Origin: Heptranchias perlo
Lineage: Eukaryota
Direction: 5' to 3'
DNA length: 64,000 nt
Assembly: GCF_035084215.1 (NCBI RefSeq)
Contig: NC_090335.1
Coordinates: 47,988,001 to 48,052,000 of the forward strand
In this document: in pieces, positions 3,478 through 62,300 of the stretch
Position numbering within the stretch: the first letter of the stretch is position 1
How the letters are laid out: each line of letters opens with the position of its first letter
Translations under genes and position numbers: made by a program
Notes under the pieces: generated by a model
Databases searched by the model: none
What the model was told of the DNA's origin: nothing
The model's input: only the letters and a program-made list of their open reading frames with translations

Positions 3478-3535
3478 TTTCATGTCTTCACTCTAACTCT
3501 TTTCTTGATTGTGTGTGTTCTCGTGTTTCTTGCAG

Positions 3536-3647
3536 GAACCTTGTGTTTGCTGAAGACAGGAGTGAGAGATGGAGCCACCAAAGGAAAGAGTTTCTATCTG
3601 TGCGGAAACCAGCATAGCTCACCGTGTGCATTCACGCAGCTTGCTGA
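3536..3647 (+). CDS. TTF2: TTF2 exon 2 (GRF zinc finger)
   Basis: tgcag|[37 protein letters not shown]|gtatgt. Confidence 0.92.
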
Positions 3648-40013: not shown

Positions 40014-41713
40014 GTCTCGAAGAGAAAACAGTCCTGAAATCTAATTGTTTATCAGTGGAGCATTCTAACAAATCTCATTCTTACAGAACTATAGTTAAGG
40101 GGCCAGTTAGAACTTCTGGATGTCTTAAACGTTTATGTCAAACATAATATGGATGTTAGTGTGTAATTATGATGGCCTACAAAAACTTTATAAGTTTATG
40201 AGTCATTTATATATTTGGTGTGTAAGTTTCTTTGTTTCAAAAATGAAATACATAGCTGCTTCATCCCTGTCTGGAGCCTGATATCCTCCACATGATTGGA
40301 TCTTAAAGTCTGGCAAAAAAGGGAGTTTTTTTTTAAACAAGAGATTACTTGATTTTTATCAGGTATAAAAACAATTCCCAATGAAAATGAAGATGTGCTT
40401 TATCAAAGTAAATACGATTTCAGTTTGGTCAGAATGTTGCTTTCTTAACTTGGCACTTGTCATTCTTTATAGACTGAATGTAAGCAGGGAAATTAATCAT
40501 TAAATTATTTTGACTCCTTTCTGCAAAATACTTTGGAAAAGATTTTGTGATCTGGTTTCTTTCAATAACTGATTCATTTCACACTTGCAGCATCTTTTAA
40601 AATACAGAACAATTCTTTAACCAAGCATGGCTTTTACATTGAGAAAATATTTGTGAATAATGCAATGAGTTAATGCTCTGTCCCTGAGGTGTGTGAGTTT
40701 GAATCTAGCTCAGATTGCAATGGAAATCCCCTTTGCTGATGTCAGTGCTCTTTGTGAAATGAGTTTTAGGCAGACTTGACACAATGGCTAATGATTTTGC
40801 TGCATTGCCCAAAGCTGCCAACAAATCAGTACAAATTGACAGTAAATTTTCAGTCTTGTTGGGTGGTTGGTGAGGCTAGGTTCAAGGCACATTGTTGGAG
40901 CAAAGCAGAGAGAGGTTTATTCTGCACCTGCAAGCTGGAAATATTTCAGAATGACACCGGATGGCCAAAATAAGAAAGTGTTCTACTCCACAGAACTGGC
41001 CTCTTTCATCATATAAGCACAAACAATCACCAAAATGTAACTTTAAATAAAAATAATTGTGATTTACTCCAACCTCCATTCTGTGAACCTTCATATTAGA
41101 ATTGGGAGCTTGATTTATATTCTGTTTAAAAATGAAATGTCATTGTGGTCCAATGCCTTTTATCTACAGAGTCTAAAAAGGACAGGTAGATTATTAAAAA
41201 AATTCTCTAGTTTATAACTGATAAAATTCATTATTCGAAGTTAATCCAGAGTTTCCAATTCGCATCTAACCATTGAAAATCTTCCATTTGTTTAAACTAG
41301 TGCTTTTCAAACTTCTGTATGGAGGATCCCTTGCAAATATTGCAAAAACTCCACAGGACCACCAGTCCTGACTTATGTAAAAGATATCGGCTACCGAAAG
41401 AAAAGCGATGCTGTCATGGTAGAAAACATTTTTATTAGTATACAGCAAAATAAGCATCAGTCACCAAATATGAGCTCATAGGATCCCAGTTTGAAAACCT
41501 GTGGTTTGAGCATCATGTAATAGGTTGAATTAGTTGAAGTACAGATTGTTTTTCTGCTAAAAAGATTTGCTCTGATGGCTGGTCTTGTGTAACCTGTTGA
41601 GATGTCCTCCATTTTATTAATTCCATAATGCATGCATTTCCTGCAAGTTGACAGTTATCAATGTTTACAGACAAAAATGTTTTTTTTTCTGTTTGCAGTG
41701 TATACAGATTCTA

Positions 41714-41719
41714 AATAAA
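41714..41719 (+). terminator. Candidate TTF2 polyadenylation signal
   Basis: AATAAA about 1.7 kb after the stop codon; another AATAAA near 41046; the region is AT-rich, so chance matches are likely. Confidence 0.35.
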
Positions 41720-43454
41720 ACTATTGGAATAGCACTCTTATTTAATGGATTGCAAAGTGAACCCTAAAACATATTGAATTTTTATGAAGTAAAGAAATGA
41801 TCATTATAAACAATTAGCATTAAAACTGGAACTTGTAACAAAAAGTCATTTCATATTATTATTTATTCCGATCTCCCAAATCTCTACCTTCCAGAAGGAC
41901 TGGAGCTGGCAATGGTATGAGAGCATTTCAGAAATGAAAAAGGACACATTACAATCATGCAAATGTTTATTACACAAAAACATGCTAAATAATTTAATTA
42001 CTTACCGTTTAGTTAGGAATCTGAACACAGATCACTGCCATCAGTAATAAACTCATTCCCACAAAGATGATGAAGTAACGTATGATTACTGGGACGAAAC
42101 GGTCATCTGTAACTACAGTACATACGGTAAGATCACCCTTCTGTGATACTAGCTTGTCAACCAGTTAACGCACTCTCAGGAAATTATTTTGCTGCTTTAT
42201 TTTTTAAACTGAGGCATTTACTTTAACTGGGTTGACACCTTAGTTAAAACAACAAATTCAGGTCTGTCATAGATAACTTCAGGTTTCAATGGCATTAGTC
42301 TCTCCCCTAAATGATCTGCGCATCTTTTAATGGAGTTGACTCGTGCTACCCTGTATCTACTTGTAGAATAGCATAGCCAAGGGTGCAACAATAGTATCTG
42401 CTCATGATCTGAACTTGTTATTTATTTTACGTGTGCTTCATTAATCTTGTCGAAGGTGGATCGAGCAATCACATGGTGAGACAGGGCCAGATACGAATCG
42501 TAAAGCTGCTTTCTTACACAATATGAGTACACATAACACTTAATTCAGTTCAACTTATCTTCATATATTAATACAAAATAACGCACCAAGCTTCCCCACA
42601 TCAATAATTCAGTCTCAGTGAAAACTCTTGCAGCTTTCTGTTTTAAAAACCTGACCGTCTGCCAGTGTCTTTGTCTCTGTTTTTATCTCCCTCTGTTCAT
42701 GGTGATCAAAAAGTTTCAATGTGACTCACTCCAACAGAGATAATTAGATATCATAGTCATTGCAGGGCCTCAGCGTCTCAATTACCAAGCGAAGTCAATC
42801 ACCAGTCAATCTGACAATGTATATGATTTACTGCTTCTAAGAATCGGGTGTAGGAAGATGAAATACTGAGGCAAAAAATCATTTAAACTGACTTGCATTT
42901 TTATGGAATAATTATATTATAAATTACATTAATCTGGCAATTCTGTATTAGCCAAAATCCTGTGGTTTAGCATATTACTGCATGTCATTATACTGAAACA
43001 AGCATTTGAAAAGTTCATAAATTTTGTCTTTAATTTGTCGTCTTATAGATTAATAGCGTCTGTCAACATGTCAGTTCAGTTTGTAGATAAATATATCACT
43101 GTGTAAAGTATCTGAATCTGTGACTTTAAATGGAGAACTAATTGTTTTCCGTGTACATAGGCCCTAAATCTAAAAAATTAAAAGGTCTGTACGATTACCC
43201 ATTAATACAGTTGTAATCCCTAGCTATATATTATGTTGTTTAAACTGACTGACTTGCACACTAACATTGTATGGAATATATTTATCAAAATGTTACTCCA
43301 GAGCCCATATCTCTTACTGACTGGTTGTCTATCCAACTCTCCATCCGCTCAGTCTTTTGTCAAGATTGCTGGCCATTTCTCTGGTCAGTCCCTGTTTCTG
43401 ATTAGCTATCCCTGTGAGCGTGTTACTGCCATTTCTCCCAATGTATGCTTATAA

Positions 43455-45153: not shown

Positions 45154-47040
45154 TCAGCAGAGCAGTCCTTCCTTGAATCGAACTGTAGCACACAGCAACT
45201 TATTTATATCTAATAAAGTGTGTTTATCAATTTTACCTACTGTGCGTGATCCGAATATTGTGCCTTTTCCATTTATGCATAAAACATTTATATTTGGCAT
45301 TCCACTAGTTGGATGTGGATTAACAGTAACTGGGAGTAGCGAACTGTGGGATTTATCCCCTTTTTGTAAACAACTTACCTCCGCTGTGACTGATCTTTTT
45401 CCTCACTGAGCCGAGGACTGTAACGTGTTGTACCTGACAGGTGACGACCGTTCCCCGGTCCAAGTGAGTGTCTCTAATCCACAGCCGGGAGCTCAGGTTG
45501 TAGGTGCCGTCACTGTTTACAGTCGGGGAGCCCTGTTCTGTTTGATAGGAGACATTTCCCGCTACAATCCAAGAAATGTTCAGATCTCTCGGGAAAAATC
45601 CCACAGCCACACAAATCAGAGTCTGAATCCCAGCAACTTCATTCTCTGGATCCGCAGAGAGATAGACTTGAGGTTCCGCTAAATAAACACATCAAAATAA
45701 CTTAAATTACAACAATCTGAGTTATAGCAAATATATAAAGAACTGTGTAAAATATTTAAATTTATGCATTTTTGATATTAAATGGGAAACTGCAGAATCA
45801 ATTTGATTAGATTGTGTCTCAATATACAAATCACCAGATACATATAATAAAATATAACACACATGTAACAATGAAAAACGGGCCAGAATAATATCCCGTG
45901 ACTTCACAATAAGTTTCTTTCGGGCACAAATTCCGTTTGTTTTCCTTTGGATCAATATCGTCAAGAAAACTGAAATAAATTGACAATACTTAGTTCACAA
46001 AATCCGTTTTGCTATTTGTAATTCGCTTCTTACATAAATAATATTCAGCCGTTAATATTGGTGTCAGCATTCTACAGTTTTGTCTCTTGGCTGTTTTTCT
46101 TCAAACGAAGTTTTAAAACTATATGAAAGTCCCTGCTGTTGAATGGTTATTGTGGAATTAAAGCTAAACGCTGGTGTATTCAGCCTAGCTCCCAGTGCAC
46201 AGAACATGTCAGTCCCAGATTAGATGTGTGTGCGGCTATTTCTGTTTCCTTTGCCCCATATATTGAATTATTTCAGTTTTAGTTAATCTAATTACCATGG
46301 ATCAAAAGCAAAATACCGCGGATGTTGGAAGTCTGAAATAAAGACAGGAAATGCTGGAAACACTCAGCGGGTCAGGCAGTATTTGTGGAGAGAGAAACCG
46401 GATTAACGTTTCAGGTCCATGACCTTAGAAACTTAAATCTCTCAATTCTTCCAGTTCTGATGAATGGTCATCGACCTGAAACGTTAACTCTGGTTCTCTC
46501 TTCACAGATGCTGCTTTACCTATTGAGCGTTTCCAACATTTTCTGTTTTTATTTCATAATTACCTTGGATGTTCAGTTCTGTTTCTTCTCCTGTAAAGGT
46601 TCTCCCGGGTCGAGGCGTCTCTTTAAGAACCAGGCAGTGGTAAGTATCTGAATCTTTCACAATCACCTCCCGAATGACAAGCGAACCCTCAGACACAGAC
46701 ACGCGAGAGCTTTGATTGAGGAAATTCTTAGTTTCGTTGCCTCTGATGCCAGGATTGTCTCTTGTTCTATACCAGTAATATCTCACCGAATCCACCTGCT
46801 CCTCTCCGGGTAACAGGGTGCAGTTGATCCGAGCTGTCTGTCCTCTCAGGAGGGACAGAGCTGAAGGAGACTGGATCACTTTCAGACCGACAGCAGGCCC
46901 TGGGACATAAAATTACAAGTAGGAACATAAAATCAAAATGATCTGAGTACAACTAGAATAAATGTTAACTGGGGTAAAAGAGAACGCTTACCTAATACAA
47001 GGAGCCAAAGTTTGAGAACAATGATTCTAAATGGACCCAT
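45154..47040 (-). CDS. Non-rearranging VJ-C1 immunoglobulin-superfamily gene, copy A (antigen-receptor-like, NKp30/PRARP-like), ~246 aa
   Basis: Leader 47040-46992 (MGPFRIIVLKLWLLVL|gtaagc). V exon 46899-46564 (VIQSP..INC..YYWYR..DSDTYHC..RTFTGEETELNIQ|gtaatt). C1 exon 45678-45379 (TLICVAVGFFPRDLNISW..NSDGTYNLSSRL..VTCQVQH|gtaagt). All introns are phase 1. The tail exon 45209-45154 (DINKLLCATVRFKEGLLC*) is less certain. Confidence 0.85.
46305..46557. mobile_element. Inverted-repeat Penelope-derived element with hammerhead in the V-C1 intron (copy B at ~55579-55831)
   Basis: Two inverted arms; + strand gtt-CUGAUGA-atggtc.atc.gacct-GAAA-cg-UU-aac at 46454-46488 and 55728-55762. Confidence 0.7.
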
Positions 47041-48504
47041 ATTGCTGAAGCCACCGTGTCACCGGTTGGTTAGACCTGGTAAGCTATGCAAAGTTAAGAT
47101 CGTTGGGACATTATTGCGGTTGTAAAGAATAGTTCGTCATATCACACTAGCTGCTGGTGGCCAGGGGCCCCAGCTAAATAGGAGGGGGCTCGCAGTAAAA
47201 CTCCCCCTAACGCAGAAAAATTGCATTCAACCGCTGGATCAGTTTAATTTAAGCGTAGTATATTGTGATATGATTTACTTCATTATCAATGCAGTGTGTA
47301 AACATCCTGGGCCTATTCATGCATTTTACTACATGCTTGTGTTTTAATGGATATGGGAGGAAGCCCCCCCATGTTCTTGGTGCCCATGGTACCAAGTGAA
47401 AAAAGCTAAGGGAAGTTGAAAACTCTATATAACATGCACAGAGCAGCAGTAAATAACATTTTTTTCAAATGAAAATGAAAGTTGACCAAAGACAATGACA
47501 CAGAAATGAAGAATCTAGGTCGCTAGAAATAAAAATGTTGACTTAGTTGCTGATCAGAGGCTTGAGATAGTTTACTGAAGTGATCAAATACATAACTTCA
47601 CAACACTGCAACTTGTTTCAAAAAACATGCCAAATAGTTGTTTAATTTTGTTAAATGTAGCAATGGAATATTTTTATTTGTTGATGAACAATCATTTATT
47701 TAAATAGGTGAGAAAGCTACTTTGATTTTTTTAAAAGTCATGCTCAGGATGTGGGCATCGCTGGCAAGCCTGGCATTTATTGCCCATCCCTAGTTGCCCT
47801 TGAAAATAGTAGTTTGATACAACTGAGTAGCTTGCTGGGCCACTTCAGAGGGCAGTTAAGAGTCAACTACGTTGGTGTGGGACTGGAGTCATATGTAGTC
47901 CAGACAAGTGTCTAAGGAAGGCAAGTTTCCTTCACTGAAGGACATTAGTCAGCTAGTTTTTTTTATGACAATCCCACAGCTTTATGGTCACTTTTACTGA
48001 TACCAGCTTTCTATTTCCAGATTTTTTAAAAAGTGAATTCAAATTCTCGAACTGCCATGGTGGGATTTGAACTCACTTTCTCTGGATTATTAGTCCAGTA
48101 AGATAACTGCAATGCTACCATACCCATAATAATAAGTCCTGAAAGGACTCGTTACTAACTTGTATAGGACCGGTTGGTAAACCTGTTGTTTCACCACAGA
48201 TTCCACATTGTTGGTAAAGGGTTTTGGATTTGTATTAATTCAAAGGCAACTGTGTAATTTGGGAGTCAGAACTCTGATCCGAGTTCCCATCGCATTGAAA
48301 CTAAGAGGGTGAGACCAGCTCAAAGAATTCCAATGGACCCCCAGGAAACTTAATGATAAATTTTAAAAGTCTTTTAAGGCGCTTTTACAATGGCACTTAT
48401 TCAGTTTGGGTCGCCAAAGAATAGCATCCATGTGTCTTCCCCCAGCCTTTAGATGGCTAAAGCCTGTTCCCTGATCCCAATGGAAGAATTATTTCAGTCT
48501 AAAC

Positions 48505-49345
48505 CAACACATAGAATTACATAGAATTTATAGCACAGAAACGGGCCATTCGGCCCCACTGGTCAATGTCGGTGTTTATGCTCCACATGAGCCTCCTCCT
48601 TCCCCACTTCATCTAACCCGATCACCATATCCTTCTATTCCTTTCTCCCTCATGTACTTATCTAGCTTCCCCTCAAATACATCTATGATATTCACCTCAA
48701 CTACTCCATGTGGGAGGAGGCGCGTGTGGAGCATAAATGCTAGCATAGACCAGTTGGGCCGACTGGCCTGTTTCTATGCTGTACATTCTATGAAATTCCA
48801 TGTAAAGTTCCACATTTCAACCACTCTCTAATTTCTCATGAATTCCTTGTTGGTTTTATAATGAGTATCTTATTCTTATGACCCCCAGTTTTGGACTCCC
48901 CCACAAGTGGAAACATCTTCTATATGTCGACCATATTAAACCCCTTCATCATTTTAAGGACTTCTATTGGGTCACCCCTCAGCCTTCTCTGTTCTAGAGA
49001 AAGGAGCTCCAGCCTGTTCAGTCTTTCCTGATAGTTATAACCTTTCAGTTCTGGTATCATCCTTGTAAATCTTTTTTGCACCTTCTCCAGTGCCACGATA
49101 TCCTTTTTGGAACACGGAGGCCAAAACTGTGCACAGTACGGCAAGTGTAGTCTAACCAAGGTTATATATATGTTTAACATAACCTCTCTGCTTTTCAATG
49201 TTATTCCTCTAGAAATTAACCTTAATGCTTTGTTTGCATTTTTATGGCCTTGTTAACTTGCAATGCTAACTTTAATGATTTGTGAATCTGTACCCCTACA
49301 TCCCTTTGCTCCTCTACCCCATTTAGACTCTTATTTTCCAAGGAA
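48505..49345 (-). mobile_element. CR1 LINE 3' fragment(s)
   Basis: ORF 48920..49198: LVRLHLPYCAQFW..LEKVQKRFTRMIP. Confidence 0.85.
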
Positions 49346-51299
49346 TAATATAGCCTCCAATCTTTTTTTAACTAGATAATCAGCTACTTTTCCAACAAAA
49401 TATCTGAAACAAAGTCAATTGTCTTTGCTTTCTTCTACATATCCACTGCTGTGGAGGCTAGTCTTGATCTATAGTTTTACTTTGTTAGTTTCTTCAGTGA
49501 GTTTGTGGCAGCATCTTTTGCCAGTGGGAATAGGGGAGTAGGGGCTTTTCAATGCATTATTCCATTTATTTGAACATTATGTTTATTAGGTTGTGCTTTG
49601 CTCCTACAGTGTTATTGTGTAAATCTGTTCTGAACCTATTAACTGCATGTTTCTCTGGAAATTAGCGTGCTCTAATTAGAGATGTATCTACACCACCAGC
49701 ATCAAAAGTCCATACCAAAAAAGTTAAAAGGACAGAAATAAATAGAGGAGTTGACTTTGTGGATTGCAGTTGTATTTCTTTCTTATGCTGCATTTAAGAG
49801 CTCAGTCTGAACATAATCTGATCAGCTATGTGGTTAACAAGTTGACCCAACCACTTAAAAGCTTGTGGATATTGGATGTAGAACTGAGAGGCTATTTGGT
49901 AAAGGACGTTAGTAGCAATCTGAAACTTGTGAACTTTCAGTGTAGGCTAGTGACTAAGGCATCCAACCAAATTGAGAGCTTACAGGTATGCAAGATACAC
50001 ACAATGGTTTTCAAATTGTCGTCTATCTGAAATGTGTGACAAATTGGTCAAAGAGATGACATGACACTTCAGAAAACATTTGTTTACATAAACAGCATGC
50101 ATCTGGTGTCTCACCCAGTTCTAGTTTTCTTAAAGTAGAATTGTCATCTGCTGAAGTTTTAAAAGAAAGGCTGAAGCAGTACACACTGACATGGCAACAT
50201 CAATATCAGTGACCACATTGTTATTACAAATTAACTATTTAAAGCAGAAGGGAAAAATGATAAAAATAAATCATTCTGAAGTAGTATGAAATTATTTAGA
50301 TGGTCAACGTAATGAAGTTTCAACAGAAATTTTGCAAGCACACCATTCTTAAGTGCTTTAGGAACTACCCAAAACCTCCTCAACATGATGACAATGTTCT
50401 TTTAGCACACAGGTTTTTGAAAACTGCAGCAACATATTGCACAATGTTAAAATTATAAAATATCAGCAATAATTTCTCCTAGGTGGAAGCTAAAATCTAT
50501 GCAATCCATATTATTCCTCAGAACATTTTGTAATACACATAACTATATATTTTAATAAAGATAATGTATTTCTTAGGACTAATGGAACTCGCAAAACTAA
50601 ACTAATGCAAATTGCAAAAGGAGCAATTCCAACTGCCACCCTGAGCTGTGAGATGATTGCTTTGAAATGTTGCTGTGTATAATAGTTACTTTTCATATTT
50701 TGCTATTTAAGCTATTTACTTATTGTCTCTCTAATAGCATTTTCTGTTAGTGACTCAAAACAATATTGAAAGGGTTATATTTCAGTTCATTGGAGTTCTT
50801 ATAGGACTTTTAATAAAATACAGACTACAGTTAGTTGGGAGATTGGAAATTGACACATCTCAGGTTTCCCAAAGGCGTGTGCTTGCCACTCTCAGGTGGC
50901 TCATTGGGGAGAGGGGATCACTTCACATGTTGCTCCAGCAAGTCTTTTGAATGGTCCATTCACCAAGGGGCTCTATTCGTGGTGTCTGTGGAAATGTTCC
51001 TGGGCTTTTCCTTCTATTTTCCCAGATGAGAACAAGGTGAATAGACAAAGGATTAACTTTGAAAAAGTGAACAATTGCAACAAAAATTGTCCAAAAAGTG
51101 CATAAACAAAAATTTATGGATATTTGATATAATGGTGAACAAATATGTCCTTAGATTAAAGATGAGATGAGAATGATGAGTGTAACATATCAAAACTTAA
51201 GTGATGAATTTTAATTTCCAGAGACATCTATTGGCTCAGTGATGATCAATTTGGTAGCATTAGTTTTAAACGTACCGTTTCTTCTCTAAACTGTAAACA

Positions 51300-51965
51300 A
51301 AGAGTATCATAGAATGGTTACAGCATGGAAGGAGGCCATTCGGCCCATCGAGTTCATGCCGGCTCTCTGCAACAGCATTCAAGTTAGTCCCACTCGCCTG
51401 CTCTATCCCGTAGCTCTGCAAATTTTTGCCCTTCAAGTACTTATCCAGTTCCCTTTTAAAAGCGACGATCGAATCAGCTTCAACTACCCCCTCATGCAGT
51501 GCATTCCAGATCCTAACCGCTCACCATGTAAAAAATGTTTTCCTCATGTCCCCTTTGGTTCTTTTACCAGTCACCTTAAATCTATGTCCTCTGGTTCTTG
51601 ACCCTTCCGCCAATTGGAACAGTTTCTCTCTATGTACTCTGTCCAGACCCTTCATGATTTTGAATACCTCTATCAAATCTACTCGCAACCGTCTCTGCTC
51701 TAAGGAGAACAACCCCAGCTTCTCGAGTCTATCCATGTAACTGAAGTCCCTCATCCCTGGAATCATTCTAGTAAATCTCTTCTGCAACCTCTCTAAGGCC
51801 TTCACATCCTTCCTAAAGTGCAGTGCCCCAAAACTGGACCAATACTCCAGTTGTGGCTGAACCAGTGTTTTATAAAGGTTCATCATAACCTCCTTGCTCT
51901 TGTACTCTATGCCTCTATTTATAAAGCCCAGGATCCCATATGCTTTCTTAATCGCTTTCTCCACA
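51300..51965 (-). mobile_element. CR1 LINE 3' fragment
   Basis: ORF 51521..51964: KAYGILGFINRGIEYKS..RFTRMIPG; partial duplicate at 58250-58670. Confidence 0.9.
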
Positions 51966-52694
51966 ATGGAAGGAAAGAGTTGAAGGAGACTTCAAATTGC
52001 ATTCTGGGTTTATTAAAGAGAAGGAAGAGGTACTTCATAATTTTCTTGAAATAGGTTTAAATTCGGTGTCGTGTTTTTTGAGTTTTTACACATAATGGAG
52101 GTGAAATTGGACCTCGCTTTGCCCATTTTGCACGCAGAAAATGGGTGCAAAGAGGTCCAATTTAGTACTCCAACCTCCCATGCCCAAACAGGTTAGGAAA
52201 CACATCCAACACCATATTCGTTCGGTGGACCAAGTTAACACTGGGTGAGATGACATTCAGTTCTATTTGTAAAGTGCTTTATTCCTCAATAGGCAAAATT
52301 TATAGAGCATTTAGTATGACGAGAGACACTTGGCACAAACAGTGCAACTTCTCTATGTAGCTAACTTGCAACTGAAAATCTCTTGCCCAGTGTTGACAAC
52401 TCTGAACTTGACAGTTGGTGGGATCTCCTCTATTTTGTGCAGACTAAACATAGGTTGAACGACTACTTTGCCAAAGACCTATGTTCTGTTTGCAAGTGTA
52501 ACACTGAGTTCCCTATTACTTCTCTTTTGTTTGGTCCTTAACACCACTACAGTGGATCTCAATGAAAATTCCAGAAATAATATCTCATCTTTCTCCTGTG
52601 CACTCTGCAGTCTTTTGGTCTGAACACTGACTTTAATAACTTAAGACCTTAATTATACCCTCCATTTCCTTTACAGCAGTGCTCTGGTGATGTT

Positions 52695-54433
52695 CATAGA
52701 ATCATAGAAAGCTACGACACGGAAGAAGGCGATTAGGCCCATCATACTTGTGCCGGCCAAAAAAGAGCTATCCAGCTTAATCCCACTTTCCAGCACTTGG
52801 TCCATAGCCCTGTAGGTTACGGAACTTCAAGTGCATATCCAAGTACTTTTTAAATGAGTTGAAGGTTTCTGCCTCCACCACCCTTTCAGGCAGTGAGTAA
52901 CAGACCCCCACCGCCCTCTGGGTGAAAAAATTTCTCCTCAGCTCTCCTCTAGTCCTTCTACCAATTACTTTAAATCTATGTCCCCTGGTCAATGACTCCT
53001 CTGCTAAGGGAAATAGGTCATCCCTATCCACTCGACCTAGTCCCTTCATAATTTTATATACCTCAATTAAATCTCCCCTCAGCCTCCTTTGTTCCAAAGA
53101 AAACAACCCCAGCCTATCCAATCTTTTCTCATAGCTAAAATTCTCCAGCCCTGGCAACATCCTAGTGAATCTCCTTTGTACCCTCTCTACTGCAATCACA
53201 TCTTTCCTGTAATGTGGTGACCAGAACTGTACGCAGAACTCAAGCTGTGGCCTAACCAATGTTTTATACAGTTCTAGCGTAACCTTCCTGCTCTTTTATT
53301 CTATGCCTCGGCTAATAAAGGAAAGTATCCCATATGCCTTTTTAACCACCTTATCTACCTGTCCTGCTACCTTCAGAGATCTGTGGACATGCACTCCAAG
53401 GTCCCTTTACACCTCTCAGTATCCTTCCATTTATTGTGTACTCCCTTGCCTTGTTTGGCCTCCCCAAATGCATTACCTCACACTTCTCTGGATTGAATTC
53501 CATTTGCCACTTTTCTGCCCACCTGACCAGTCCATTGATATCTTCTTGCAGTCTACAGCTTTTCCTCCTCACTATCAGCCACACAGCCAATGGTGCTGGA
53601 CGATTGGAGGACTGCTAATGTGGTACCATTGTTTAAAAGGGGAGAAAGAGATAGACCGAGTAACTATAGACCAGTCAGTCTAACCTCGGTGGTGGGCAAA
53701 TTATTGGAATCAATTCTGAGGGACAGCATAAATTGTCATTTAGAAAGGCACGGGTTAATCAAGGACTGTCAGCGTGGATATTTTAAGGAAAGGTCGTGTC
53801 TGACTAATTTGATTGAATTTTTTGAGGTGACTTCTTGCAAACTTCTTGATCAAGCCCCCCACATTCAAATCCAAATTATTAATATACACAACAAAAAGCA
53901 AGGGAACTAGTACTGAGCCTGGCAGAACCCCACTGGAAACAGCCTTCCAGTCGCAAAAACACCCGTCAACCATTACCCTTTGCTTCCTGCCACTGAGCCA
54001 ATTTTGGATCCAACTAGCCACATTCCCTTGGATCCCATGGGCTTTTACTTTTTTGACCAGTCTGCCATGTGGGACCTTGTCAAAAGCCTTGCTAAAATCC
54101 ATGTACACTACATCAAGGGGGGTTACCCTCATCGACCCTGCTTGTTATCACCTCAAAAAATTCAATCAAATTAGTCAGACACGACCTTACCGTAAAATAT
54201 CCACGCTGACAGTCCTTGATTAACCCGTGCCCTTCTAAATGATAATTTATGCTGTCCCTCAGAATTGATTCCAATAATTTGCCCACCACCAAGGTTAGAC
54301 TGACTGGTCTATAGTTACTTTGTCCATCTCTTTCTCCCCTTTGAAACAATGGTACCATGTTAGCAGTCCTCCAATCGCCCAGCAACACGCCTGTAGCCAG
54401 GGAGGATTGGAAAATGATGGTCAGATCCTCTGC
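52695..54433 (-). mobile_element. CR1 LINE 3' half, the duplicated part of the 59410 element, with an internal inverted insert at 53590-53830
   Basis: RT motifs DVVYMDFSKAFDKVPH, SGVLPGS, and ORF 52777..53259. Confidence 0.9.
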
Positions 54434-56308
54434 CCTTCCTTGAATCGAACTGTAGCACACAGCAACTTATTTATATCTAATAAAGTGTGTTTATCAATTT
54501 TACCTACTGTGCGTGATCCGAATACTTACTATTGTGCCTTTTCCATTTATGCATAAAACATTTATATTTGGCATTCCACTAGTTGGATATGGATTAACAG
54601 TACCTGGGAGTAGCGATCTGTGGGATTTATCCCCTTTTTGTAAACAACTTACCTCCGCTGTGACTGATCTTTTTCCTCACTGAGCCGAGGACTGTAACGT
54701 GTTGTACCTGACAGGTGACGACCGTTCCCCGGTCCCAGTGAGTGTCTCTAATCCACAGCCGGGAGCTCAGGTTGTAGGTGCCGTCACTGTTTACAGTCGG
54801 GGAGCCCTGTTCTGTTTGATAGGAGACATTTCCCTCTACAATCCAAGAAATGTTCAGATCTCTCGGGAAAAATCCCACAGCCACACAAATAAGAGTCTGA
54901 ATCCCAGCAACTTCATTCTCTGGATCCGCAGAGAGATAGAATTCAGGTTCCGCTAAATAAACACATCAAAATAACTTAAATTATAACAATCTGAGTTATA
55001 GCAAATATATAAAGAACTGTGTAAAATATTTAAATTTATGCATATTTGATACTAAATGGGAAACTGCAGAATCAATTTGATTAGATTGTGTCTCAATATA
55101 CAAATCACCAGATACATATAATAAAATATAACACACATGTAACAATGAAAAACGGGCCAGAATAATATCCCGTGACTTCACAATAAGTTTCTTTCGGGCA
55201 CAAATTCCGTTTATTTTTCTTTGGATCAATATCGTCAAGAAAACTGAAATAAATTGACAATACTTAGTTCACAAAATCCGTTTTGCTATTTGTAATTCGC
55301 TTCTTACATAAATAATATTCAGCCGTTAATATTGGTGTCAGCATTCTACAGTTTTGTCTTTTGGCTGTTTTTCTTCCGTCGAAGTTTTAAAACTATATGA
55401 AAGTCCCTGCTGTTGAATGGTTATTGTGGAATTAAAGCTAAACGCTGGTGTATTCAGCCTAGCTCCCAGTGCACAGAACATGTCAGTCCCAGATTAGATG
55501 TGTGTGCGGCTATTTCTGTTTCCTTTGCCCCATATATTGAATTATTTCAGTTTTATTTAATCTAATTACCATGGATCAAAAGCAAAATACCGCGGATGTT
55601 GGAAGTCTGAAATAAAGACAGGAAATGCTGGAAACACTCAGCGGGTCAGGCAGTATTTGTGGAGAGAGAAACCGGATTAACGTTTCAGGTCCATGACCTT
55701 AGAAACTTAAATCTCTCAATTCTTCCAGTTCTGATGAATGGTCATCGACCTGAAACGTTAACTCTGGTTCTCTCTTCACAGATGCTGCTTTACCTATTGA
55801 GCGTTTCCAACATTTTCTGTTTTTATTTCATAATTACCTTGGATGTTCAGTTCTGTTTCTTCTCCTGTAAAGGTTCTCCCGGGTCGAGGCGTCTCTTTAA
55901 GAACCAGGCAGTGGTAAGTATCTGAATCTTCCACAGTCACCTCCCGAATGACAAGCGAACCCTCAGACACGCGAGAGCTTTGATTGAGGAAATTCTTAGT
56001 TTCGTTGCCTCTGATGCCAGGATTGTCTCTTGTTCTGTACCAGTAATATCTCACCGAATCCACCCGCTCCTCTCCGGGTAACAGGGTGCAGTTGATCCGA
56101 GCTGTCTGTCCTCTCAGGAGGGACAGAGCTGAAGGAGACTGGATCACTTTCAGACCGACAGCAGGCCCTGGGACATAAAATTACAAGTAGGAACATAAAA
56201 TCAAAATGATCTGAGTACAACTAGAATAAATGTTAACTGGGGTAAAAAAGAACGCTTACCTAATACAAGGAGCCAAAGTTTGAGAACAATGATTCTAAAT
56301 GGACCCAT
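54421..56308 (-). CDS. Non-rearranging VJ-C1 IgSF gene, copy B (tandem duplicate with its 3' end fused to a CR1 LINE), ~244 aa
   Basis: Leader 56308-56260, V 56167-55838 (6 nt shorter than copy A), C1 54952-54653. Putative tail 54476-54421 (DINKLLCATVRFKEGQRI*), whose last codons come from the LINE. Confidence 0.8.
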
Positions 56309-59300
56309 ATTGCTGAAGCCACCGTGTCACCGGTTGGTTAGACCTGGTAAGCTATGCAAAGTTAAGATCGTTGGGACATTATTGCGGTTGTAAAGAATAG
56401 TTCGTCATATCACACTAGCTGCTGGTGGCCAGGGGCCCCAGCTAAATAGGAGGGGGCTCGCAGTAAAACTCCCCCTAACGCAGAAAAATTGCATTCAACC
56501 GCTGGATCAGTTTAATTTAAGCGTAGTATATTGTGATATGATTTACTTCATTATCAATGCAGTGTGTAAACATCCTGGGCCTATTCATGCATTTTACTAC
56601 ATGCTTGTGTTTTAATGGATATGGGGGGAAGCCCCCCCATGTTCTTGGTGCCCATGGTACCAAGTGAAAAAAGCTAAGGGAAGTTGAAAACTCTATATAA
56701 CATGCACAGAGCAGCAGTAAATAACATTTTTTTCAAATGAAAATGAAAGTTGACCAAAGACAATGACACAGAAATGAAGAATCTAGGTCGCTAGAAATAA
56801 AAATGTTGACTTAGTTGCTGATCAGAGGCTTGAGATAGTTTACTGAAGTGATCAAATACATAACTTCACAACGCTGCAACTTGTTTCGAAAAACATGCCA
56901 AATAGTTGTTTAATTTTGTTAAATGTAGCAATGGAATATTATTATTTGTTGATGAACAATCATTTATTTAAATAGGTGAGAAAGCTACTTTGATTTTTTT
57001 TAAAAGTCATGCTCAGGATGTGGGCATCGCTGGCAAGCCTGGCATTTATTGCCCATCCTTAGTTGCCCTTGAAAATAGTAGTTTGATACAACTGAGTAGC
57101 TTGCTGGGCCACTTCAGAGGGCAGTTAAGAGTCAACTACGTTGGTGTAGGACTGGAGTCATATGTAGTCCAGACAAGTTTCTAAGGAAGGCAAGTTTCCT
57201 TCACTGAAGGACATTATTCAGCTAGTTTTTTTATGACAATCCCACAGCTTTATGGTCACTTTTACTGATACCAGCTTTCTATTTCCAGATTTTTTTAAAA
57301 GTGAATTCAAATTCTCGAACTGCCATGGTGGGATTTGAACTCACTTTCTCTGGATTATTAGTCCAGTAAGATAACTGCAATGCTACCATACCCATAATAA
57401 TAATAAGTCCTGAAAGGACTCGTTACTAACTTGTATAGGACCGGTTGGTAAACCTGTTGTTTCGCCACAGATTCCACATTGTTGGCAAAGAGTTTTGGAT
57501 TTGTATTAATTCAAAGGCAACTGTGTAATTTGGGAGTCAGAACTCTGATCCGAGTTCCCATCGCATTGAAACTAAGAGGGTGAGACCAGCTCAAAGAATT
57601 CCAATGGACCCCCAGGAAACTTAATGATAAATTTTAAAAGTCTTTTAGGGCGCTTTTACAATGGCACTTATTCAGTTTGCGTCGCCAAAGAATAGCATCC
57701 ATGTCCCAGTCTTTAGATGGCTTAAGCCTGTTCCCGTACCCCAATGGAAGAATTATTTCAGTCTAAACCAATACATAGAATTACATAGAATTTATAGCAC
57801 AGAAACAGGCCATTCGGCCCCACTGGTCAATGTCGGTGTTTATGCTCCACATGAGCCTCCTCCTTCCCCACTTCATCTAACCCGATCACCATATCCTTCT
57901 ATTCCTTTCTCCCTCATGTACTTATCCAGCTTCCCCTCAAATACATCTATGATATTCACCTCAACTACTCCATGTGGGAGGAGGCGCGTGTGGAGCATAA
58001 ATGCTAGCATAGTTGGGCCAACTGGCCTGTTTCTATGCTGTACATTCTATGAAATTCCATGTAAAGTTCCACATTTCAACCACTCTCTAGTTTCTCATGA
58101 ATTCCTTGTTGGTTTTATAATGAGTATCTTATTCTTATGACCCCCAGTTTTGGACTCCCCCACAAGTGGAAACATCTTCTATATGTCGACCGTAATAAAC
58201 CCCTTCATCATTTTAAGGACTTCTATTGGGTCATCCCTCAGCCTTCTCTGTTCTTTTACCAGTCACCTTAAATCTATGTCCTCTGGTTCTTGACCCTTCC
58301 GCCAATTGGAACAGTTTCTCTCTATGTACTCTGTCCAGACCCTTCATGATTTTGAATACCTCTATCAAATCTACTCGCAACCGTCTCTGCTCTAAGGAGA
58401 ACAACCCCAGCTTCTCGAGTCTATCCATGTAACTGAAGTCCCTCATCCATGGAATCATTCTAGTAAATCTCTTCTGCACCCTCTCTAAGGCTTTCACATC
58501 CTTCCTAAAGTGCAGTGCCCCAGAACTGGACCAATACTCCAGTTGTGGCTGAACCAGTGTTTTATAAAGGTTCATCATAACCTCCTTGCTCTTGTACTCT
58601 ATGCCTCTGTTTATAAAGCCCAGGATCCCATATGCTTTCTTAATCGCTTTCTCCACCTGCCCTGCCACCAGTAAGGTACAAATGGAAGGAAAGAGTTGAA
58701 GGAGACTTCAAATTGCATTCTGGGTTTATTAAAGAGAAGGAAGAGGTACTTCATAATTTTCTTGAAATAGGTTTAAATTCGGTGTCGTGTTTTTTATGTT
58801 TTTACACATAATGGAGGTGAAATTGGACCTCATTTTCCCCATTTTGCAGGCAGAAAATGGGTGCAAAGAGGTCCAATTTAGGGCTCCAACCTCCCATGCC
58901 CAAACAGGTTAGGAAACACATCCAACACCATATTGGTTCGGTGGACCAAGTTAACACTGGGTGAGATGACATTCAGTTCTATTTGTAAAGTGCTTTATTC
59001 CTCAATAGGCAAAATTTATAGAGGATTTAGTATGACAAGAGACACTTGGCACAAACAGTGCAACTTCTCTATGTAGCTAACTTGCAACTGAAAATCTCTT
59101 GCCCAGTGTTGACAACACTGAACTTGACAGTTGGTGGGATCTCTTCTATTTTGTGGAGACTAAACACAGGTTGAATGACTACTTTGCCAAATTCTCATGT
59201 TCTGTTTGCAAGTGTAACACTGAGTTCCCTATGACTTCTCTTTTGTTTGGTCCTTAACACTGCTACAGTGGATCTCAATGAAAATTCCAGAAATAACATC

Positions 59301-62300
59301 TCATCTTTCTCCTGTGCACTCTGCAGTCTTTTGGTCTGAACACTGACTTTAATAACTTAAGACCTTAATTATACCCTCCATTTCCTTTACAGCAGTGCTC
59401 TGGTGATGTTCATAGAATCATAGAAAGCTACGACACAGAAGGAGGCCATTAGGCCCATCATACCCGTGCTGGCCAAAAAAGAGCTATCCAGCTTAATCCC
59501 ACTTTCTAGCACTTGGTTACGGAACTTCAAGTGCACATCTAAGTATTTTTAAAATGAGTTGAGGGTTTCTGCCTCTACCACCCTTTCAGGCAGTGAGTTC
59601 CAGACCCCCACCACCCTCTGGGTGAAAAAATTTCTCCTCAGCTCTCCTCTAGTCCTTCTACCAATTACTTTAAATCTATGTCTGCTGGTCAGTAACTCCC
59701 CTGCTAAGGGAAATAGGTCATCCCTATCCACTCGACCTAGTCCCTTCATAATTTTATATACCTCAATTAAATCTCCCCTCAGCCTCCTTTGTTCCAAAGA
59801 AAACAACCCCAGCCTATCCAATCTTTTCTCATAGCTAAAATTCTCCAGCCCTGGCAACATCCTAGTGAATCTCCTCTGTACCCTCTCTACTGCAATCACA
59901 TCTTTCCTGTAATGTGGTGACCAGAACTGTACGCAGAACTCAAGCTGTGGCCTAACCAATGTTTTATACAGTTCTAGCGTAACCTTCCTGCTCTTTTATT
60001 CTATGCCTCGGCTAATAAAGGAAAGTATCCCATATGCCTTTTTAACCACCTTATCTACCCGTCCTGCTACCTTCAGGGATCTGTGGACATGCACTCTAAG
60101 GTCCCTTTACACCTCTCAGTATCCTTCCATTTATTGTGTACTCCCTTGCCTTGTTTGGCCTCCCCAAATGCATTACCTCACACTCCTCTGGATTGAATTC
60201 CATTTGCCACTTTTCTGCCCACCTAACCAGTCCATTGATATCTTCCTGCAGTCGACAGCTTTTCCTCCTCATTATCAGCCACACAGCCAATTTTTGTATC
60301 ATCTGCAAACTTCTTGATCAAGCCCCCCACATTCAAATCCAAATTATTAATATATACAGCAAAAAGCAAGGGACCTAGTATTGAGCCTGGCAGAACCCCA
60401 CTGGAAACAGCCTTCCAGACGCAAAAACACCCATTACCCTTTGCTTCCTGCCACTGAGCCAATTTTGGATCCAACTAGCCACTTTCCCTTGGATCCCATG
60501 GGCTTTTACTTTTTTGACCAGTCTGCCATGTGGGACCTTGTCAAAAGCCTTGCTAAAATCCATGTACACTACATCAAGGGGGGTTACCCTCATCGACCCT
60601 GCTTGTTATCACCTCAAAAAATTCAATCAAATTAGTCAGACACGACCTTTCCTTAAAATATCCACGCTGACAGTCCTTGATTAAACCGTGCCTTTCTAAA
60701 TGATAATTTATGCTGTCCCTCAGAATTGATTCCAATAATTTGCCCACCACCGAGGTTAGACTGACTGGTCTATAGTTACTCGGTCTATCTCTTTCTCCCC
60801 TTTTAAACAACGGTACCACGTTAGCAGTCCTCCAATCGTCCAGCACCACGCCTGTAGCCAGGGAGGATTGGAAAATGATGGTCAGATCCTCTGCTATTTC
60901 CTCCCTTGCTTCTCTTAACAGCCTGGGATACATTTCATCCGGGCCTGGCGATTTATCTACTTTCAAAGGTGCTAAACCCTTTAATACTTCCTCTCTCGCT
61001 ATGTTTATCCCATCCAATATTTCACACTCCTTCTCCTTAACTACAATCTCTGCATCGTCCCGCTCTTTTATGAAGACAGATGCAAAGTATTCATTTAGAA
61101 CTGTACCCACGTCTTCCACCTCCACACATAGGTTACCTCTTTGGTCTCTAATAGGCCTACTCTTTCCTTAGTTATTCTCTTGCTCTTCATGTTTTTATAA
61201 AACATCTTTGGGTTTTCCTTAATTTTATTTGTCAGTATTTTTTCATGCCCTCTCTTTGCTTTCCTAATTTCCATTTTAATTTCACCCCTGCACTTTCTAT
61301 ACTCCTCTAGGCTTTCTACAGTATTGAGCTCTCGGTATCTGACGTAAGCTTTCCTTTTTTGCTGTATCCTACCCTGTATGCTCCTTGTCATCCAGGGAGC
61401 TCTTGATTTGGCAGTCCCACCTTTTTTCTTTGAGGGGACATGTTTGTTCTGAACCCTCACAATCTCTCCCTTGAATGCCTCCCACTGCTCTGACACTGAT
61501 TTACCTTCAAGTAGCTGTTTTCAGTCCACTTTTGCTAAATCACTTCTCAGCTTAGTAGAATTGGCCTTTGCCCAATTGTTGGGGAAAGGCCAATCTTACC
61601 TGTTCTATCTTTGTCCTTTTCCATAACAATGCTAAATCTAACTGAATTATGATCACTACCAGCAAAATGCTCTTCCACTGATACTCCTTTCACCTGCCCA
61701 GCTTCATTCCTAAAACTAAGTCCAGAACTGCCCCCCCGCCCCCCCCGTCTTATTAGGCTTGCTATGTACTGGCTAAAAAAGTTCTCCTGAATGCAATTGA
61801 AGAATTCTGCACCCTCTATACCTTTTACACTGCTTGCATCTGGTATGGACTCAATGGGCCGAACGGCCTCCTTCCTGTGCTGTAACCTTTCTATGATTCT
61901 ATCCCAGTTAATATTAGGGTAGTTGAAATCCCCTACTATTACTGCCCTGTCGTTTATGCACTTCTCAGAAATTTGCCTACATATTTGCTCTTCTATCTCC
62001 CTCTGACTGTTTGGGGGTCTATAGTACACTCCCAGTAGTGGTGATTTTTCTAACATATCATCCCTCCTCACAGCTGTAATTGTTTCTTTAACCAATATTG
62101 CCACCCCCTCTTTTTTTATCCCCCCCTCTATCTTGTCTGAAAACCCTGTAACCAGGAATGTTGAGCTGCCATTCCTGCCCCTCTTTAAGCCATGTTTCAG
62201 TAATAGCTAAGATATCAAACTTCCACATGTCTATCTGTGCCCTTAGCTCATCTGCCTTATTCACTATACTCCTTGCATTGAAGTATATACCAATAATCAC

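What the first reader, a model, noticed from the sequence alone, without database searches (positions are those of the whole stretch)
45154..56308. Pair of germline-joined VJ-C1 antigen-receptor-like genes directly downstream of TTF2
Seen: each copy has a leader exon and a single V exon (INC, YYWYR, DSDTYHC) that runs without interruption into a J-like G strand (RTFTGEETELNIQ). A C1-set exon follows (CVAVGFFPRDLNISW, NSDGTY, TCQVQH). I see no RSS or separate J segment. There are six N-glycosylation sequons. Established: C1-set domains are largely confined to Ig, TCR, MHC, b2m, tapasin and a few relatives. Human TTF2 lies on 1p13 among IgSF genes (CD101, VTCN1, PTGFRN, CD2, CD58, IGSF3), on a chromosome carrying an MHC-paralogous region. 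Non-rearranging VJ-C1 genes (PRARP/VJC1 type) have been proposed as remnants of the pre-RAG receptor. Inference: this is a chondrichthyan member, or a new family, of such primordial receptors with light-chain/TCR architecture but invariant specificity.
Basis: partly seen in the sequence, partly recalled or inferred. Interest (0 to 1): 0.9.

Follow-up and report, generated by a model that had tools for sequence, protein, structure and literature searches.

The report
Shark SIRP-like activating receptor gene pair
The two antigen-receptor-shaped genes are real, but they belong to a shark and ray family of paired "on/off" immune receptors that resembles mammalian SIRPs: one copy is an unannotated activating member and the other is a truncated duplicate.

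Summary
Two minus-strand copies, about 98% identical in a 9.27-kb tandem unit, each carry a split leader, one uninterrupted V exon ending in a J-like strand, and a C1-set exon. There are six sequons and no RSS.

The genes belong to a pan-chondrichthyan family that NCBI auto-names "SIRP-like", "SHPS-1-like" or "Ig kappa-like". Its members come in two forms:
- inhibitory: V-C1-TM with a tail of ITIM/ITSM-like tyrosines;
- activating: V-C1, a TM helix with a conserved Arg, and a very short tail.

It matches the Arg-bearing TM of sawfish and stingray activating forms. Copy 1 is therefore an activating member, absent from the protein collections searched. Copy 2 lost that exon at the duplication junction and runs into a LINE.

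The abundant spliced mRNA in public runs comes from a third, inhibitory paralogue, Heptranchias perlo "Ig kappa light chain-like", which is 96-97% identical and lies outside the window.

V and C1 trees group sequences by taxon, not by signalling type. This points to ectodomain homogenisation, as in SIRPα/β.

The closest solved relatives are SIRPα and UrIg2, about equally. SIRP orthology is unproven, and TTF2 synteny in other species could not be tested. The scan has flagged similar VJ-C1-ITIM genes elsewhere in this genome.

The parts
46992..47040 (-). Copy 1 leader exon (ATG at 47040; MGPFRIIVLKLWLLVL plus the first base of Gly). This is a split leader.
   Evidence: Sequence and GT donor. The joint 46898|46991 is seen in the paralogue's RNA contig.
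46564..46899 (-). Copy 1 V exon with a germline-joined J-like G strand (…DSDTYHCLVLKETPRPGRTFTGEETELNIQ). Phase 1 at both ends.
   Evidence: Pfam V-set E 2.3e-10. RNA joint 45678|46564 with GT-AG on the minus strand. No RSS.
45379..45678 (-). Copy 1 C1-set exon (…CVAVGFFPRDLNISW…TCQVQH…SHSG).
   Evidence: Pfam C1-set E 2.1e-15. PDB hits to IgG CH3, UrIg2 and SIRP C1 domains.
42006..42106 (-). With the split codon it encodes DDRFVPVIIRYFIIFVGMSLLLMAVICVQIPN*, with an Arg in the helix. Stop TAA at 42011-42009.
   Evidence: Found by a hydrophobicity scan. AG acceptor in phase 1 and GT donor. tblastn to the sawfish activating form P0087: 64% over 28 aa, E 3e-7. The same TM type occurs in Hemitrygon P0106 and Mobula P0107. 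The donor is used in an RNA contig (X1 record 1).
41400..41640 (-). Copy 1 3' UTR exon. Its 3' end lies beyond the stretch that was laid. AATAAA at 41618 and 41436.
   Evidence: A 1300-nt RNA contig joins 42005 to 41639 with GT-AG on the minus strand and no mismatches. PolyA signals.
56260..56308 (-). Copy 2 leader exon, identical to copy 1.
55838..56167 (-). Copy 2 V(J) exon. It has an in-frame 6-bp deletion plus Q>R, I>T and K>E relative to copy 1.
   Evidence: Pfam V-set E 4.3e-11. Codon comparison.
54653..54952 (-). Copy 2 C1-set exon (Q>E, V>F, A>E, L>W relative to copy 1).
   Evidence: Pfam C1-set E 4.8e-17..
54434..60861 (.). Second tandem duplication unit. The first unit is 45167-54433. 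The junction at 54434 lies about 220 bp downstream of copy 2's C1 exon, so copy 2 has no TM exon and runs into a LINE reverse-transcriptase ORF.
   Evidence: Self-blastn. Sequence. No TM-like exon in 47100-54650.
3478..40013 (+). Neighbouring gene with TTF2 architecture (GRF zinc finger, SNF2 domain, Helicase_C), convergent with copy 1.
   Evidence: Pfam Zn_ribbon_GRF, SNF2-rel_dom and Helicase_C on exon ORFs. The best PDB match is RAD5. The last coding exon ends at 40010.

Best explanation
The locus holds one activating member (copy 1) and one 3'-truncated duplicate (copy 2) of a chondrichthyan family of non-rearranging VJ-C1 paired immunoreceptors. The family resembles mammalian SIRPs. Copy 1 encodes a signal peptide (split leader), a V domain with a germline J-like G strand, one C1-set domain, a TM helix with a conserved Arg, and a five-residue tail. 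By analogy with SIRPβ, LILRA, FcαRI and GPVI, the Arg would pair with an acidic residue in an ITAM adaptor (of the FcRγ, DAP12 or CD3ζ type) and deliver an activating signal. A third paralogue lies outside the window: Heptranchias perlo 'Ig kappa light chain-like', P0096. Its ectodomain is 96-97% identical, but it carries a different TM and a tail with LHYAFV, TEYAVL, VHYSTV and TIYVSL motifs. That paralogue would recruit SH2 phosphatases and inhibit. Both forms presumably see the same, unknown ligand. Within each species the ectodomains are kept alike, most simply by gene conversion. Copy 2 arose by a recent 9.27-kb tandem duplication that left the TM exon behind. Shown here: exon structure, domain identities, family membership, the conserved Arg-TM exon, splicing of the family's leader-V-C1 exons and of copy 1's last intron, and taxon-wise clustering. 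Inferred: adaptor pairing, opposite signalling, a shared ligand, and gene conversion.
For: 1. Domains and exon structure: Pfam V-set and C1-set on both copies, with phase-1 exons and intact, identical splice sites.
2. Orthologues: phmmer against 1.84 billion representatives finds orthologues at 54-72% V identity. They come from Pristis, Scyliorhinus, Hypanus and Narcine and are auto-named SIRPβ1-like or SHPS-1-like. Further members occur in Mustelus, Heptranchias, Mobula, Stegostoma, Hemiscyllium, Heterodontus, Cetorhinus, Hemitrygon and Callorhinchus.
3. Inhibitory tails: conserved tyrosine motifs appear in alignment A1.
4. Activating forms: Pristis P0087, Hemitrygon P0106 and Mobula P0107 have an Arg-bearing TM. 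The window exon 42106-42006 matches it, with the Arg conserved (tblastn E 3e-7).
5. Taxon-wise clustering: V and C1 trees cluster by taxon, with activating and inhibitory forms interleaved. Pristis act+inh has support 99/97. The window copies plus Heptranchias_inh have support 99 in the C1 tree and are nearest neighbours in the V tree.
6. RNA: a spliced leader-V-C1 contig has depth 561, 44, 33 and 38 in four runs. All eight of its differences from copy 1 equal P0096 residues. A contig identical to the window shows copy 1's last intron spliced out. A V-exon contig carries the copy-1/2 base at 46860 and ends at the exon boundary.
7. Nearest known relatives: the family profile against PDB gives SIRPα V+C1 69.9 bits plus 43.8 bits for its third domain. 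ESM Atlas features are nearest to SIRPα clusters, score 0.96 with 210 of 256 features shared.
Against: A complete leader-V-C1-TM mRNA from copy 1 was not observed. The C1-to-TM joint (45379|42106) is not among the listed joints. The low-depth contigs over 41400-45339 also cover intron sequence, so they may come from pre-mRNA or contaminating DNA. The runs are Logan contigs from one sample, and their RNA status is only a guess. No protein matching the window's copies is in the 5.8-billion-protein collection, so the gene is apparently unannotated. Since the duplication, the two copies differ by 7 nonsynonymous and 2 synonymous changes, which gives no sign of purifying selection. The J-like motif is degenerate: G-E-E replaces the G-X-G seen in the orthologues. 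No shark ITAM adaptor or ligand was examined. SIRP orthology is not established: most members have one C1 domain instead of two, Arg replaces Lys in the TM, and UrIg2 scores almost as well.
Confidence: 0.72

Rival explanations
1. Both window copies are non-functional by-products of segmental duplication. Only the inhibitory paralogue elsewhere is a working gene.
For: The abundant mRNA carries the paralogue's variants, not the window's. Neither copy has a matching protein in the public collections. Copy 2 lacks any TM exon and runs into a LINE. The exon divergence of 7 nonsynonymous to 2 synonymous changes equals the non-coding rate.
Against: All reading frames and all splice sites are intact in both copies, and the only indel is in frame. 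Copy 1's TM exon keeps the Arg, the phase and the stop seen in rays that diverged long ago. Its donor is used in an RNA contig, and a V-exon contig carries the window-type base at 46860. At about 2% divergence the duplication is too young for decay to show.
Confidence: 0.17
2. One reading: a relic of the pre-RAG antigen receptor. It would be a third UrIg-type lineage on the chromosome-1-type MHC paralogon, with invariant specificity and a secreted or light-chain-like product.
For: It has a VJ exon, a C1 domain and a split leader, as in UrIg and UrIg2 (PMC12227049). UrIg2 has the highest summed score against the family profile, 128 bits over four domains. The V exon alone hits lambda VL, VNAR and TCRα best. 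The locus abuts a TTF2-type gene.
Against: The architecture is that of a cell-surface paired receptor with one C1 domain and either an ITIM/ITSM-like tail or an Arg-bearing TM. It is not a multi-C antibody-like chain. Over a single V+C1 stretch SIRPα (69.9 bits) is at least as close as UrIg2 (65.0 bits). No membrane-proximal Cys for an interchain bond is present. Copy 1 has a TM exon, so a secreted product is not predicted. Synteny with TTF2 in other species and paralogon membership were not testable.
Confidence: 0.1
3. An ordinary germline-joined shark immunoglobulin light-chain cluster.
For: NCBI auto-names some orthologues 'immunoglobulin kappa light chain-like'. The V exon's best PDB hits are lambda V domains, E about 1e-5.
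Against: Similarity to VL is weak. Orthologues carry TM and signalling tails that no light chain has. The C1 exon is no closer to CL than to CH3, SIRP or UrIg2. The family is conserved as a receptor from chimaera to rays.
Confidence: 0.01

Closest known systems
SIRP family (SIRPα/SHPS-1, SIRPβ1, SIRPγ; structures 2WNG, 4I2X)
   Same: Both have an N-terminal non-rearranging V domain with a J-like G strand, followed by C1-set domain(s). Both have paired inhibitory and activating members: a multi-tyrosine YA-x-[LVI] tail versus a basic TM residue with a very short tail. Ectodomains are nearly identical within a species. The family profile aligns over the whole V+C1 of SIRPα (69.9 bits) and to its third domain (43.8 bits). 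SIRPα clusters are the nearest ESM Atlas neighbours. NCBI auto-names most members SIRP-like.
   Different: There is one C1 domain instead of two; only myliobatiform rays have two, through a lineage-specific exon duplication. The TM carries Arg instead of Lys. The locus is next to TTF2, whereas the human SIRP cluster lies on 20p13 (from memory). CD47 binding is unknown. Sequence identity is low, and UrIg2 and Ig domains score almost as well, so orthology is unproven.
UrIg / UrIg2 (non-rearranging elasmobranch VJ-C genes; PMC12227049; PDB 9DMX)
   Same: Both have a single-exon VJ domain, a split leader and C1-type domains, occur in elasmobranchs and do not rearrange. The UrIg2 V(part)+C1 stretch scores 65.0 bits against the family profile.
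   Different: Nurse shark UrIg2 has nine C domains and forms disulfide-linked dimers with an Fc-like C2-C3. UrIg is MHC-linked and UrIg2 is linked to the antigen-receptor complex. The present family has one C1 domain, signals through ITIM-like tails or an Arg-bearing TM, and lies next to TTF2.
[quoted passage not shown] 2019, J Immunol 202:1992)
   Same: As recalled from the abstract, and cited in PMC10751288: non-rearranging VJ genes with a V-C1 combination in fish, amphibians and reptiles, and a cytoplasmic ITIM.
   Different: The nearest non-chondrichthyan V-C1-TM proteins (Rhinatrema P0039, Polyodon P0068) reach only E about 1e-4 to 1e-5 on the V exon and form a separate clade.
Other paired immunoreceptors with an Arg in the TM (LILRA/PIR-A, FcαRI, GPVI, NKp46/NKp30)
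   Same: An Arg in the outer third of the TM helix, a very short tail, and an inhibitory ITIM-bearing counterpart with a like ectodomain.
   Different: Those receptors use C2- or I-type domains, or a lone V domain, not VJ-C1. The resemblance is functional and rests on recalled knowledge, not on a test made here.

Membership tests
Chondrichthyan SIRP-like VJ-C1 paired-receptor family (NCBI auto-names: SIRPβ1-like, SHPS-1-like, Ig kappa light chain-like) | High sequence identity of both the V and the C1 exon to family members. | tested here: met
   96-97% to Heptranchias perlo P0096/P0102, 73-78% to Heterodontus, and 52-72% to other sharks and rays. The window copies group with Heptranchias_inh in both trees.
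Chondrichthyan SIRP-like VJ-C1 paired-receptor family | Exon plan: split leader, one VJ exon, C1 exon(s), TM exon, all in phase 1. | tested here: met
   Copy 1 has leader 47040-46992, V 46899-46564, C1 45678-45379 and TM 42106-42006. Copy 2 lacks the TM exon.
Chondrichthyan SIRP-like VJ-C1 paired-receptor family | A signalling module: either an ITIM/ITSM-like tail or a TM helix with a conserved Arg and a short tail. | tested here: met
   Copy 1's TM exon encodes …VPVIIRYFIIFVG…, aligning with the Pristis, Hemitrygon and Mobula activating forms. The inhibitory tail is absent from the window.
SIRP family (vertebrate SIRPα/β/γ) | A V domain with a J-like strand followed by two C1-set domains. | tested here: inconclusive
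   VJ and C1 are present, but with only one C1 domain. Hypanus and Mobula have two through duplication.
SIRP family (vertebrate SIRPα/β/γ) | Closer in sequence to SIRPs than to any other VJ-C1 protein. | tested here: inconclusive
   SIRPα V+C1 scores 69.9 bits against UrIg2 at 65.0, lambda at 49.7 and CH3 at about 46. The Atlas's nearest clusters are SIRPα. No phylogeny with named references could be built.
SIRP family (vertebrate SIRPα/β/γ) | Conserved synteny with the SIRP locus, and CD47 as ligand. | not testable with these tools
No binding data exist.
Rearranging antigen receptors / germline-joined IgL | RSS-flanked V and J segments or, if germline-joined, a light-chain C domain with no TM or signalling exons. 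| tested here: not met
   No RSS is present. The TM exon and the orthologues' ITIM-like tails argue against it.
UrIg/UrIg2 | A VJ exon followed by multiple C domains (three unique ones plus repeats), linked to the MHC or the antigen-receptor complex. | tested here: not met
   There is a single C1 exon followed by a TM exon, and the neighbour is a TTF2-type gene. UrIg2 features are from PMC12227049.
Ig C1-set domain | A Pfam PF07654 match above the gathering score. | tested here: met
   57.3 and 62.5 bits against a cut-off of 21.

The most novel reading that the evidence does not exclude
This family is the cartilaginous-fish representative, or the sister, of the SIRP lineage. If so, a SIRP-type system of paired inhibitory and activating VJ-C1 receptors, with homogenised ectodomains, already existed in the common ancestor of jawed vertebrates. 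Its position next to TTF2, on the chromosome-1-type MHC paralogon, would make it a third surviving non-rearranging VJ-C1 lineage. The other two are UrIg in the MHC and UrIg2 in the antigen-receptor complex. All three would descend from the proto-antigen-receptor region.
Probability: 0.2. Interest if true: 0.7.

Novelty: new member of a known kind. Interest (0 to 1): 0.5.

Why it matters
Paired receptors with VJ-C1 ectodomains, such as SIRPs, are the closest non-rearranging look-alikes of antigen receptors. This work shows that a family with the same logic spans chimaeras, sharks and rays. One ectodomain is coupled either to ITIM-like tyrosines or to an Arg-bearing TM helix, and the two forms are kept alike within each species. 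That dates the design to at least the crown chondrichthyan ancestor. It also offers a tractable system for asking what such receptors recognised when Ig, TCR and MHC were young.

On the practical side, the work identifies an apparently unannotated activating gene and corrects inconsistent automatic names (SIRPβ-like, Ig kappa-like, TCRβ-like, Ig heavy chain Mem5-like). It also supplies a linkage to a TTF2-type gene that can be tested against the MHC-paralogon hypothesis.

Tried and rejected
Synteny of the orthologues with TTF2 and the genomic place of the inhibitory paralogue could not be examined.
- The exons were not joined into a spliced protein. All searches used single exons or public orthologue proteins.
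- An AlphaFold2 model of the paralogue with the 11-sequence alignment had mean pLDDT 41.7, so no fold search was run.
- An ESM Atlas search with the cytoplasmic tail alone gave no usable hit.
- Six literature searches found no description of this family. The PRARP paper, the UrIg 2023 paper and the Flajnik-Kasahara review are not held.
- Rejected TM candidate at 27325-27354. It is an 11-residue hydrophobic run followed by SQQ and a stop, lying inside a TTF2 intron.
It is not hydrophobic and not similar to any family exon, and no joint to it was listed. The contig ends at 45199 are what a 31-mer assembly graph gives at the duplication boundary at 45167.
- No TM exon for copy 2 was found by tblastn or by a hydrophobicity scan.
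- My first codon comparison was in the wrong frame. It was redone.

Full report
**1. What is in the sequence**

- Copy 1: leader exon 47040-46992 (MGPFRIIVLKLWLLVL plus one base), V exon 46899-46564, C1 exon 45678-45379.
- Copy 2: leader 56308-56260, V exon 56167-55838, C1 exon 54952-54653.

All exons are in phase 1. The last residues of the signal peptide lie in the V exon, which is a split leader. Every leader, V and C1 splice site is identical in the two copies.

Pfam gives V-set (E 2e-10 and 4e-11) and C1-set (E 2e-15 and 5e-17), all above the curated cut-offs. The V exon runs without a break from FR1 through …DSDTYHC…RTFTGEETELNIQ to its GT donor. No consensus RSS heptamer or nonamer lies in either copy. 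Each copy has six N-X-S/T sequons. The window contains no N.

The copies belong to a tandem duplication: 45167-48995 equals 54434-58254 at 97.9% identity. The duplication continues as 51558-53591 = 58250-60291 after a 2.56-kb indel, through LINE fragments.

On the plus strand, exon-sized ORFs carry a GRF zinc finger (3478-3648), SNF2-related motifs (21.5-26.3 kb) and Helicase_C (36.6 kb). The last coding exon ends at 40010. This is the domain architecture of TTF2. The receptor genes are therefore next to TTF2's 3' end but convergent with it.

Every search used single exons or public orthologue proteins.

**2. The family**

A phmmer search with the V exon against 1.84 billion representatives returned four strong hits at 54-72% identity, followed by a steep drop. 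They are:
- Pristis pectinata XP_051870357, "SIRP beta-1-like";
- Scyliorhinus canicula XP_038658211, "SHPS-1-like";
- Hypanus sabinus;
- Narcine bancroftii.

Word-indexed searches with these proteins and with their alignment added members from eight more elasmobranch genera: Mustelus, Heptranchias, Mobula, Stegostoma, Hemiscyllium, Heterodontus, Cetorhinus and Hemitrygon. They also added a Callorhinchus fragment, and nothing outside Chondrichthyes. The automatic names are inconsistent: SIRPβ1-like, SHPS-1-like, Ig kappa light chain-like, TCR beta chain-like and Ig heavy chain Mem5-like.

Most members are V-C1-TM. The TM is of the …YYFSLLSLILIVPFCLWII… type. The tail has four conserved tyrosine motifs: LHYASV, TEYAVL, VxYSxV and TxYASL (alignment A1). 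These fit ITIM and ITSM consensus patterns, which I know from memory. Myliobatiform rays have a duplicated C1 exon.

A second form exists in Pristis (XP_051869794, P0087), Hemitrygon (P0106) and Mobula (P0107). It has the same ectodomain, then …DNYLIPVIVRHFIIVVGISLLLLAVICIHTSR or a similar sequence: a TM helix with an Arg and almost no tail.

**3. The missed exon**

The first tblastn, run with inhibitory orthologues, found no TM or tail exon in the window. However, a hydrophobicity scan had flagged an ORF at 42164-42012. It proved to match the activating-type TM: tblastn with P0087 gives 64% identity over 28 residues, E 3e-7, with the Arg aligned.

The exon is 42106-42006. It has an AG acceptor in phase 1, so the split codon reads Asp. 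It encodes DDRFVPVIIRYFIIFVGMSLLLMAVICVQIPN, has its stop at 42011-42009, and ends in a GT donor. A further intron, 42005-41641, leads to a 3' UTR exon with AATAAA at 41618 and 41436.

Copy 1 is therefore an activating-type member. The duplication boundary at 45167/54434 lies between the C1 and TM exons. Copy 2 consequently has no TM exon and runs into a LINE reverse-transcriptase ORF.

**4. Species and transcripts**

Heptranchias perlo "immunoglobulin kappa light chain-like" isoforms X1 and X2 (P0096, P0102) are 96-97% identical to the window's V and C1 exons, but they carry the inhibitory TM and tail.

Four public runs were laid on 41400-47300. They come from one sample and are held as Logan contigs, and their RNA status is only a guess. 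They contain a spliced contig with joints 45678|46564 and 46898|46991, GT-AG on the minus strand, at depth 561, 44, 33 and 38. Its eight differences from copy 1 (leader I>N; V A>V, Q>R, F>L; C1 A>E, Y>H, L>W, plus one silent change) all equal the P0096 residues. Its 550-720 nt downstream of the C1 exon do not lie on 41400-45376.

The abundant mRNA is therefore the inhibitory paralogue, encoded outside the window. This confirms the splicing pattern of the family, and it suggests that the window comes from the same species.

Evidence for the window's own copies is thinner:
- A 1300-nt contig identical to the window joins 42005 to 41639. This shows that the TM exon's donor and the last acceptor are used, but the contig also retains sequence upstream of the TM acceptor.
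- A 234-nt V-exon contig carries the window-type base at 46860 and ends at the exon boundary.
- Low-depth contigs also cover intron sequence, so they could be pre-mRNA or contaminating DNA.

The C1-to-TM junction was not seen. No protein matching the window's copies is in the 5.8-billion-protein collection, so the gene appears unannotated.

**5. Evolutionary pattern**

Maximum-likelihood trees of the V exon and the C1 exon group sequences by taxon rather than by signalling type.
- Pristis activating and inhibitory forms are sisters (support 99/97).
- Hemitrygon activating, Hypanus inhibitory and Mobula forms interleave.
- The window copies group with the Heptranchias inhibitory gene (support 99 in the C1 tree).

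The Arg-bearing TM exon is nevertheless shared between a hexanchiform shark and batoids. The two signalling modules are therefore old, while the ectodomains are kept alike within each species. The simplest reading is gene conversion, as described for other paired receptors (for example Siglec-11/16, PMC5701461). This is an inference; no conversion test was run.

Since their duplication, copies 1 and 2 differ by 7 nonsynonymous and 2 synonymous changes plus an in-frame 6-bp deletion. That rate equals the non-coding rate, so selection cannot be read from it.

**6. Comparison with known families**
- The V exon alone hits lambda VL, VNAR and TCRα at E about 1e-5.
- The C1 exon alone hits IgG CH3 at a per-domain E of about 2e-8, and also UrIg2.
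- With the family profile, the best single stretches are SIRPα V+C1 at 69.9 bits (whole V and C1, plus 43.8 bits for its third domain), UrIg2 part-V+C1 at 65.0, lambda at 49.7 and CH3 at about 46.
- ESM Atlas features are nearest to two SIRPα clusters, score 0.96 with 210 and 205 of 256 features shared.

The family works like SIRPs. Membership in the SIRP family remains open: most members have one C1 domain rather than two, Arg replaces Lys, the locus differs, and UrIg2 is almost as close.

It is not UrIg or UrIg2, which have multiple C domains and lie in the MHC or the antigen-receptor complex (PMC12227049). It is not an IgL.

More distant V-C1-TM proteins form separate clades: Callorhinchus LOC103180135 with Pristis XP_051870431, and Rhinatrema with Polyodon. 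They may include PRARP-type genes, but that paper was not available.

**7. Mechanism proposed**

Copy 1 would be a surface receptor whose TM Arg pairs with an ITAM adaptor. The inhibitory paralogue would bind the same ligand and recruit SH2 phosphatases. Copy 2 is a V-C1 cassette without a membrane anchor. It may be inert or may give a soluble product. Because the C1 donor and the V acceptor share phase 1, it could also be read through into copy 1. All of this is inference from architecture.

**8. Limits**
- The AlphaFold2 model was of low confidence (pLDDT 41.7), so no fold search was made.
- No paper describing the family was found in six searches, but key subscription papers are not held.
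- Other first-stage notes report several VJ-C1-TM-ITIM genes elsewhere in this genome. I did not test them.

Noticed in passing
window 43370-43960, 44749-44945, 46325-46521: Repeat-derived stretches draw very deep and variable contig coverage in the public runs, up to about 2e5. The first holds the 3' end of a CR1/L2-like LINE ORF (43541-43885, minus strand). The last lies in the V-C1 intron and shows 'goes back' and 'opposite strands' joints typical of dispersed repeats.
   Followed up: no
window 48996-51557: There is a 2.56-kb indel between the two duplication units: present in unit 1 and absent from unit 2 at 58254/58250.
   Followed up: partly
window 53591-53830 vs 60848-60609: A 240-bp LINE piece is inverted in unit 1 relative to unit 2 (98% identity), a rearrangement at the edge of the duplication.
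   Followed up: no
window 60574-63772 (-): A long non-LTR retrotransposon has endonuclease and reverse-transcriptase ORFs split by frame changes. Its 3' part is the sequence that copy 2 runs into.
   Followed up: no
window 40010-42006: The TTF2-type gene's stop (40010, plus strand) and copy 1's stop (42009, minus strand) are only 2 kb apart. The 3' UTRs of the convergent genes may overlap: RNA contigs run past 41400 towards TTF2.
   Followed up: partly
P0102 (Heptranchias) and P0101 (Heterodontus), isoforms X2: Predicted isoforms of the inhibitory gene skip the TM exon (…SHSG|DSSIHDKN…). That would give a soluble V-C1 protein carrying the cytoplasmic tail sequence.
   Followed up: no
P0003/P0088 (Hypanus), P0097 (Mobula): Myliobatiform rays carry two nearly identical C1 domains (V-C1-C1). 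This is a lineage-specific exon duplication, and the two domains cluster together in the C1 tree.
   Followed up: partly
P0031 (Callorhinchus LOC103180135), P0057 (Pristis XP_051870431), P0039 (Rhinatrema), P0068 (Polyodon): Two further V-C1-TM receptor clades have tyrosine-motif tails, one chondrichthyan and one osteichthyan. They are distant relatives of this family and possibly PRARP-type genes.
   Followed up: partly
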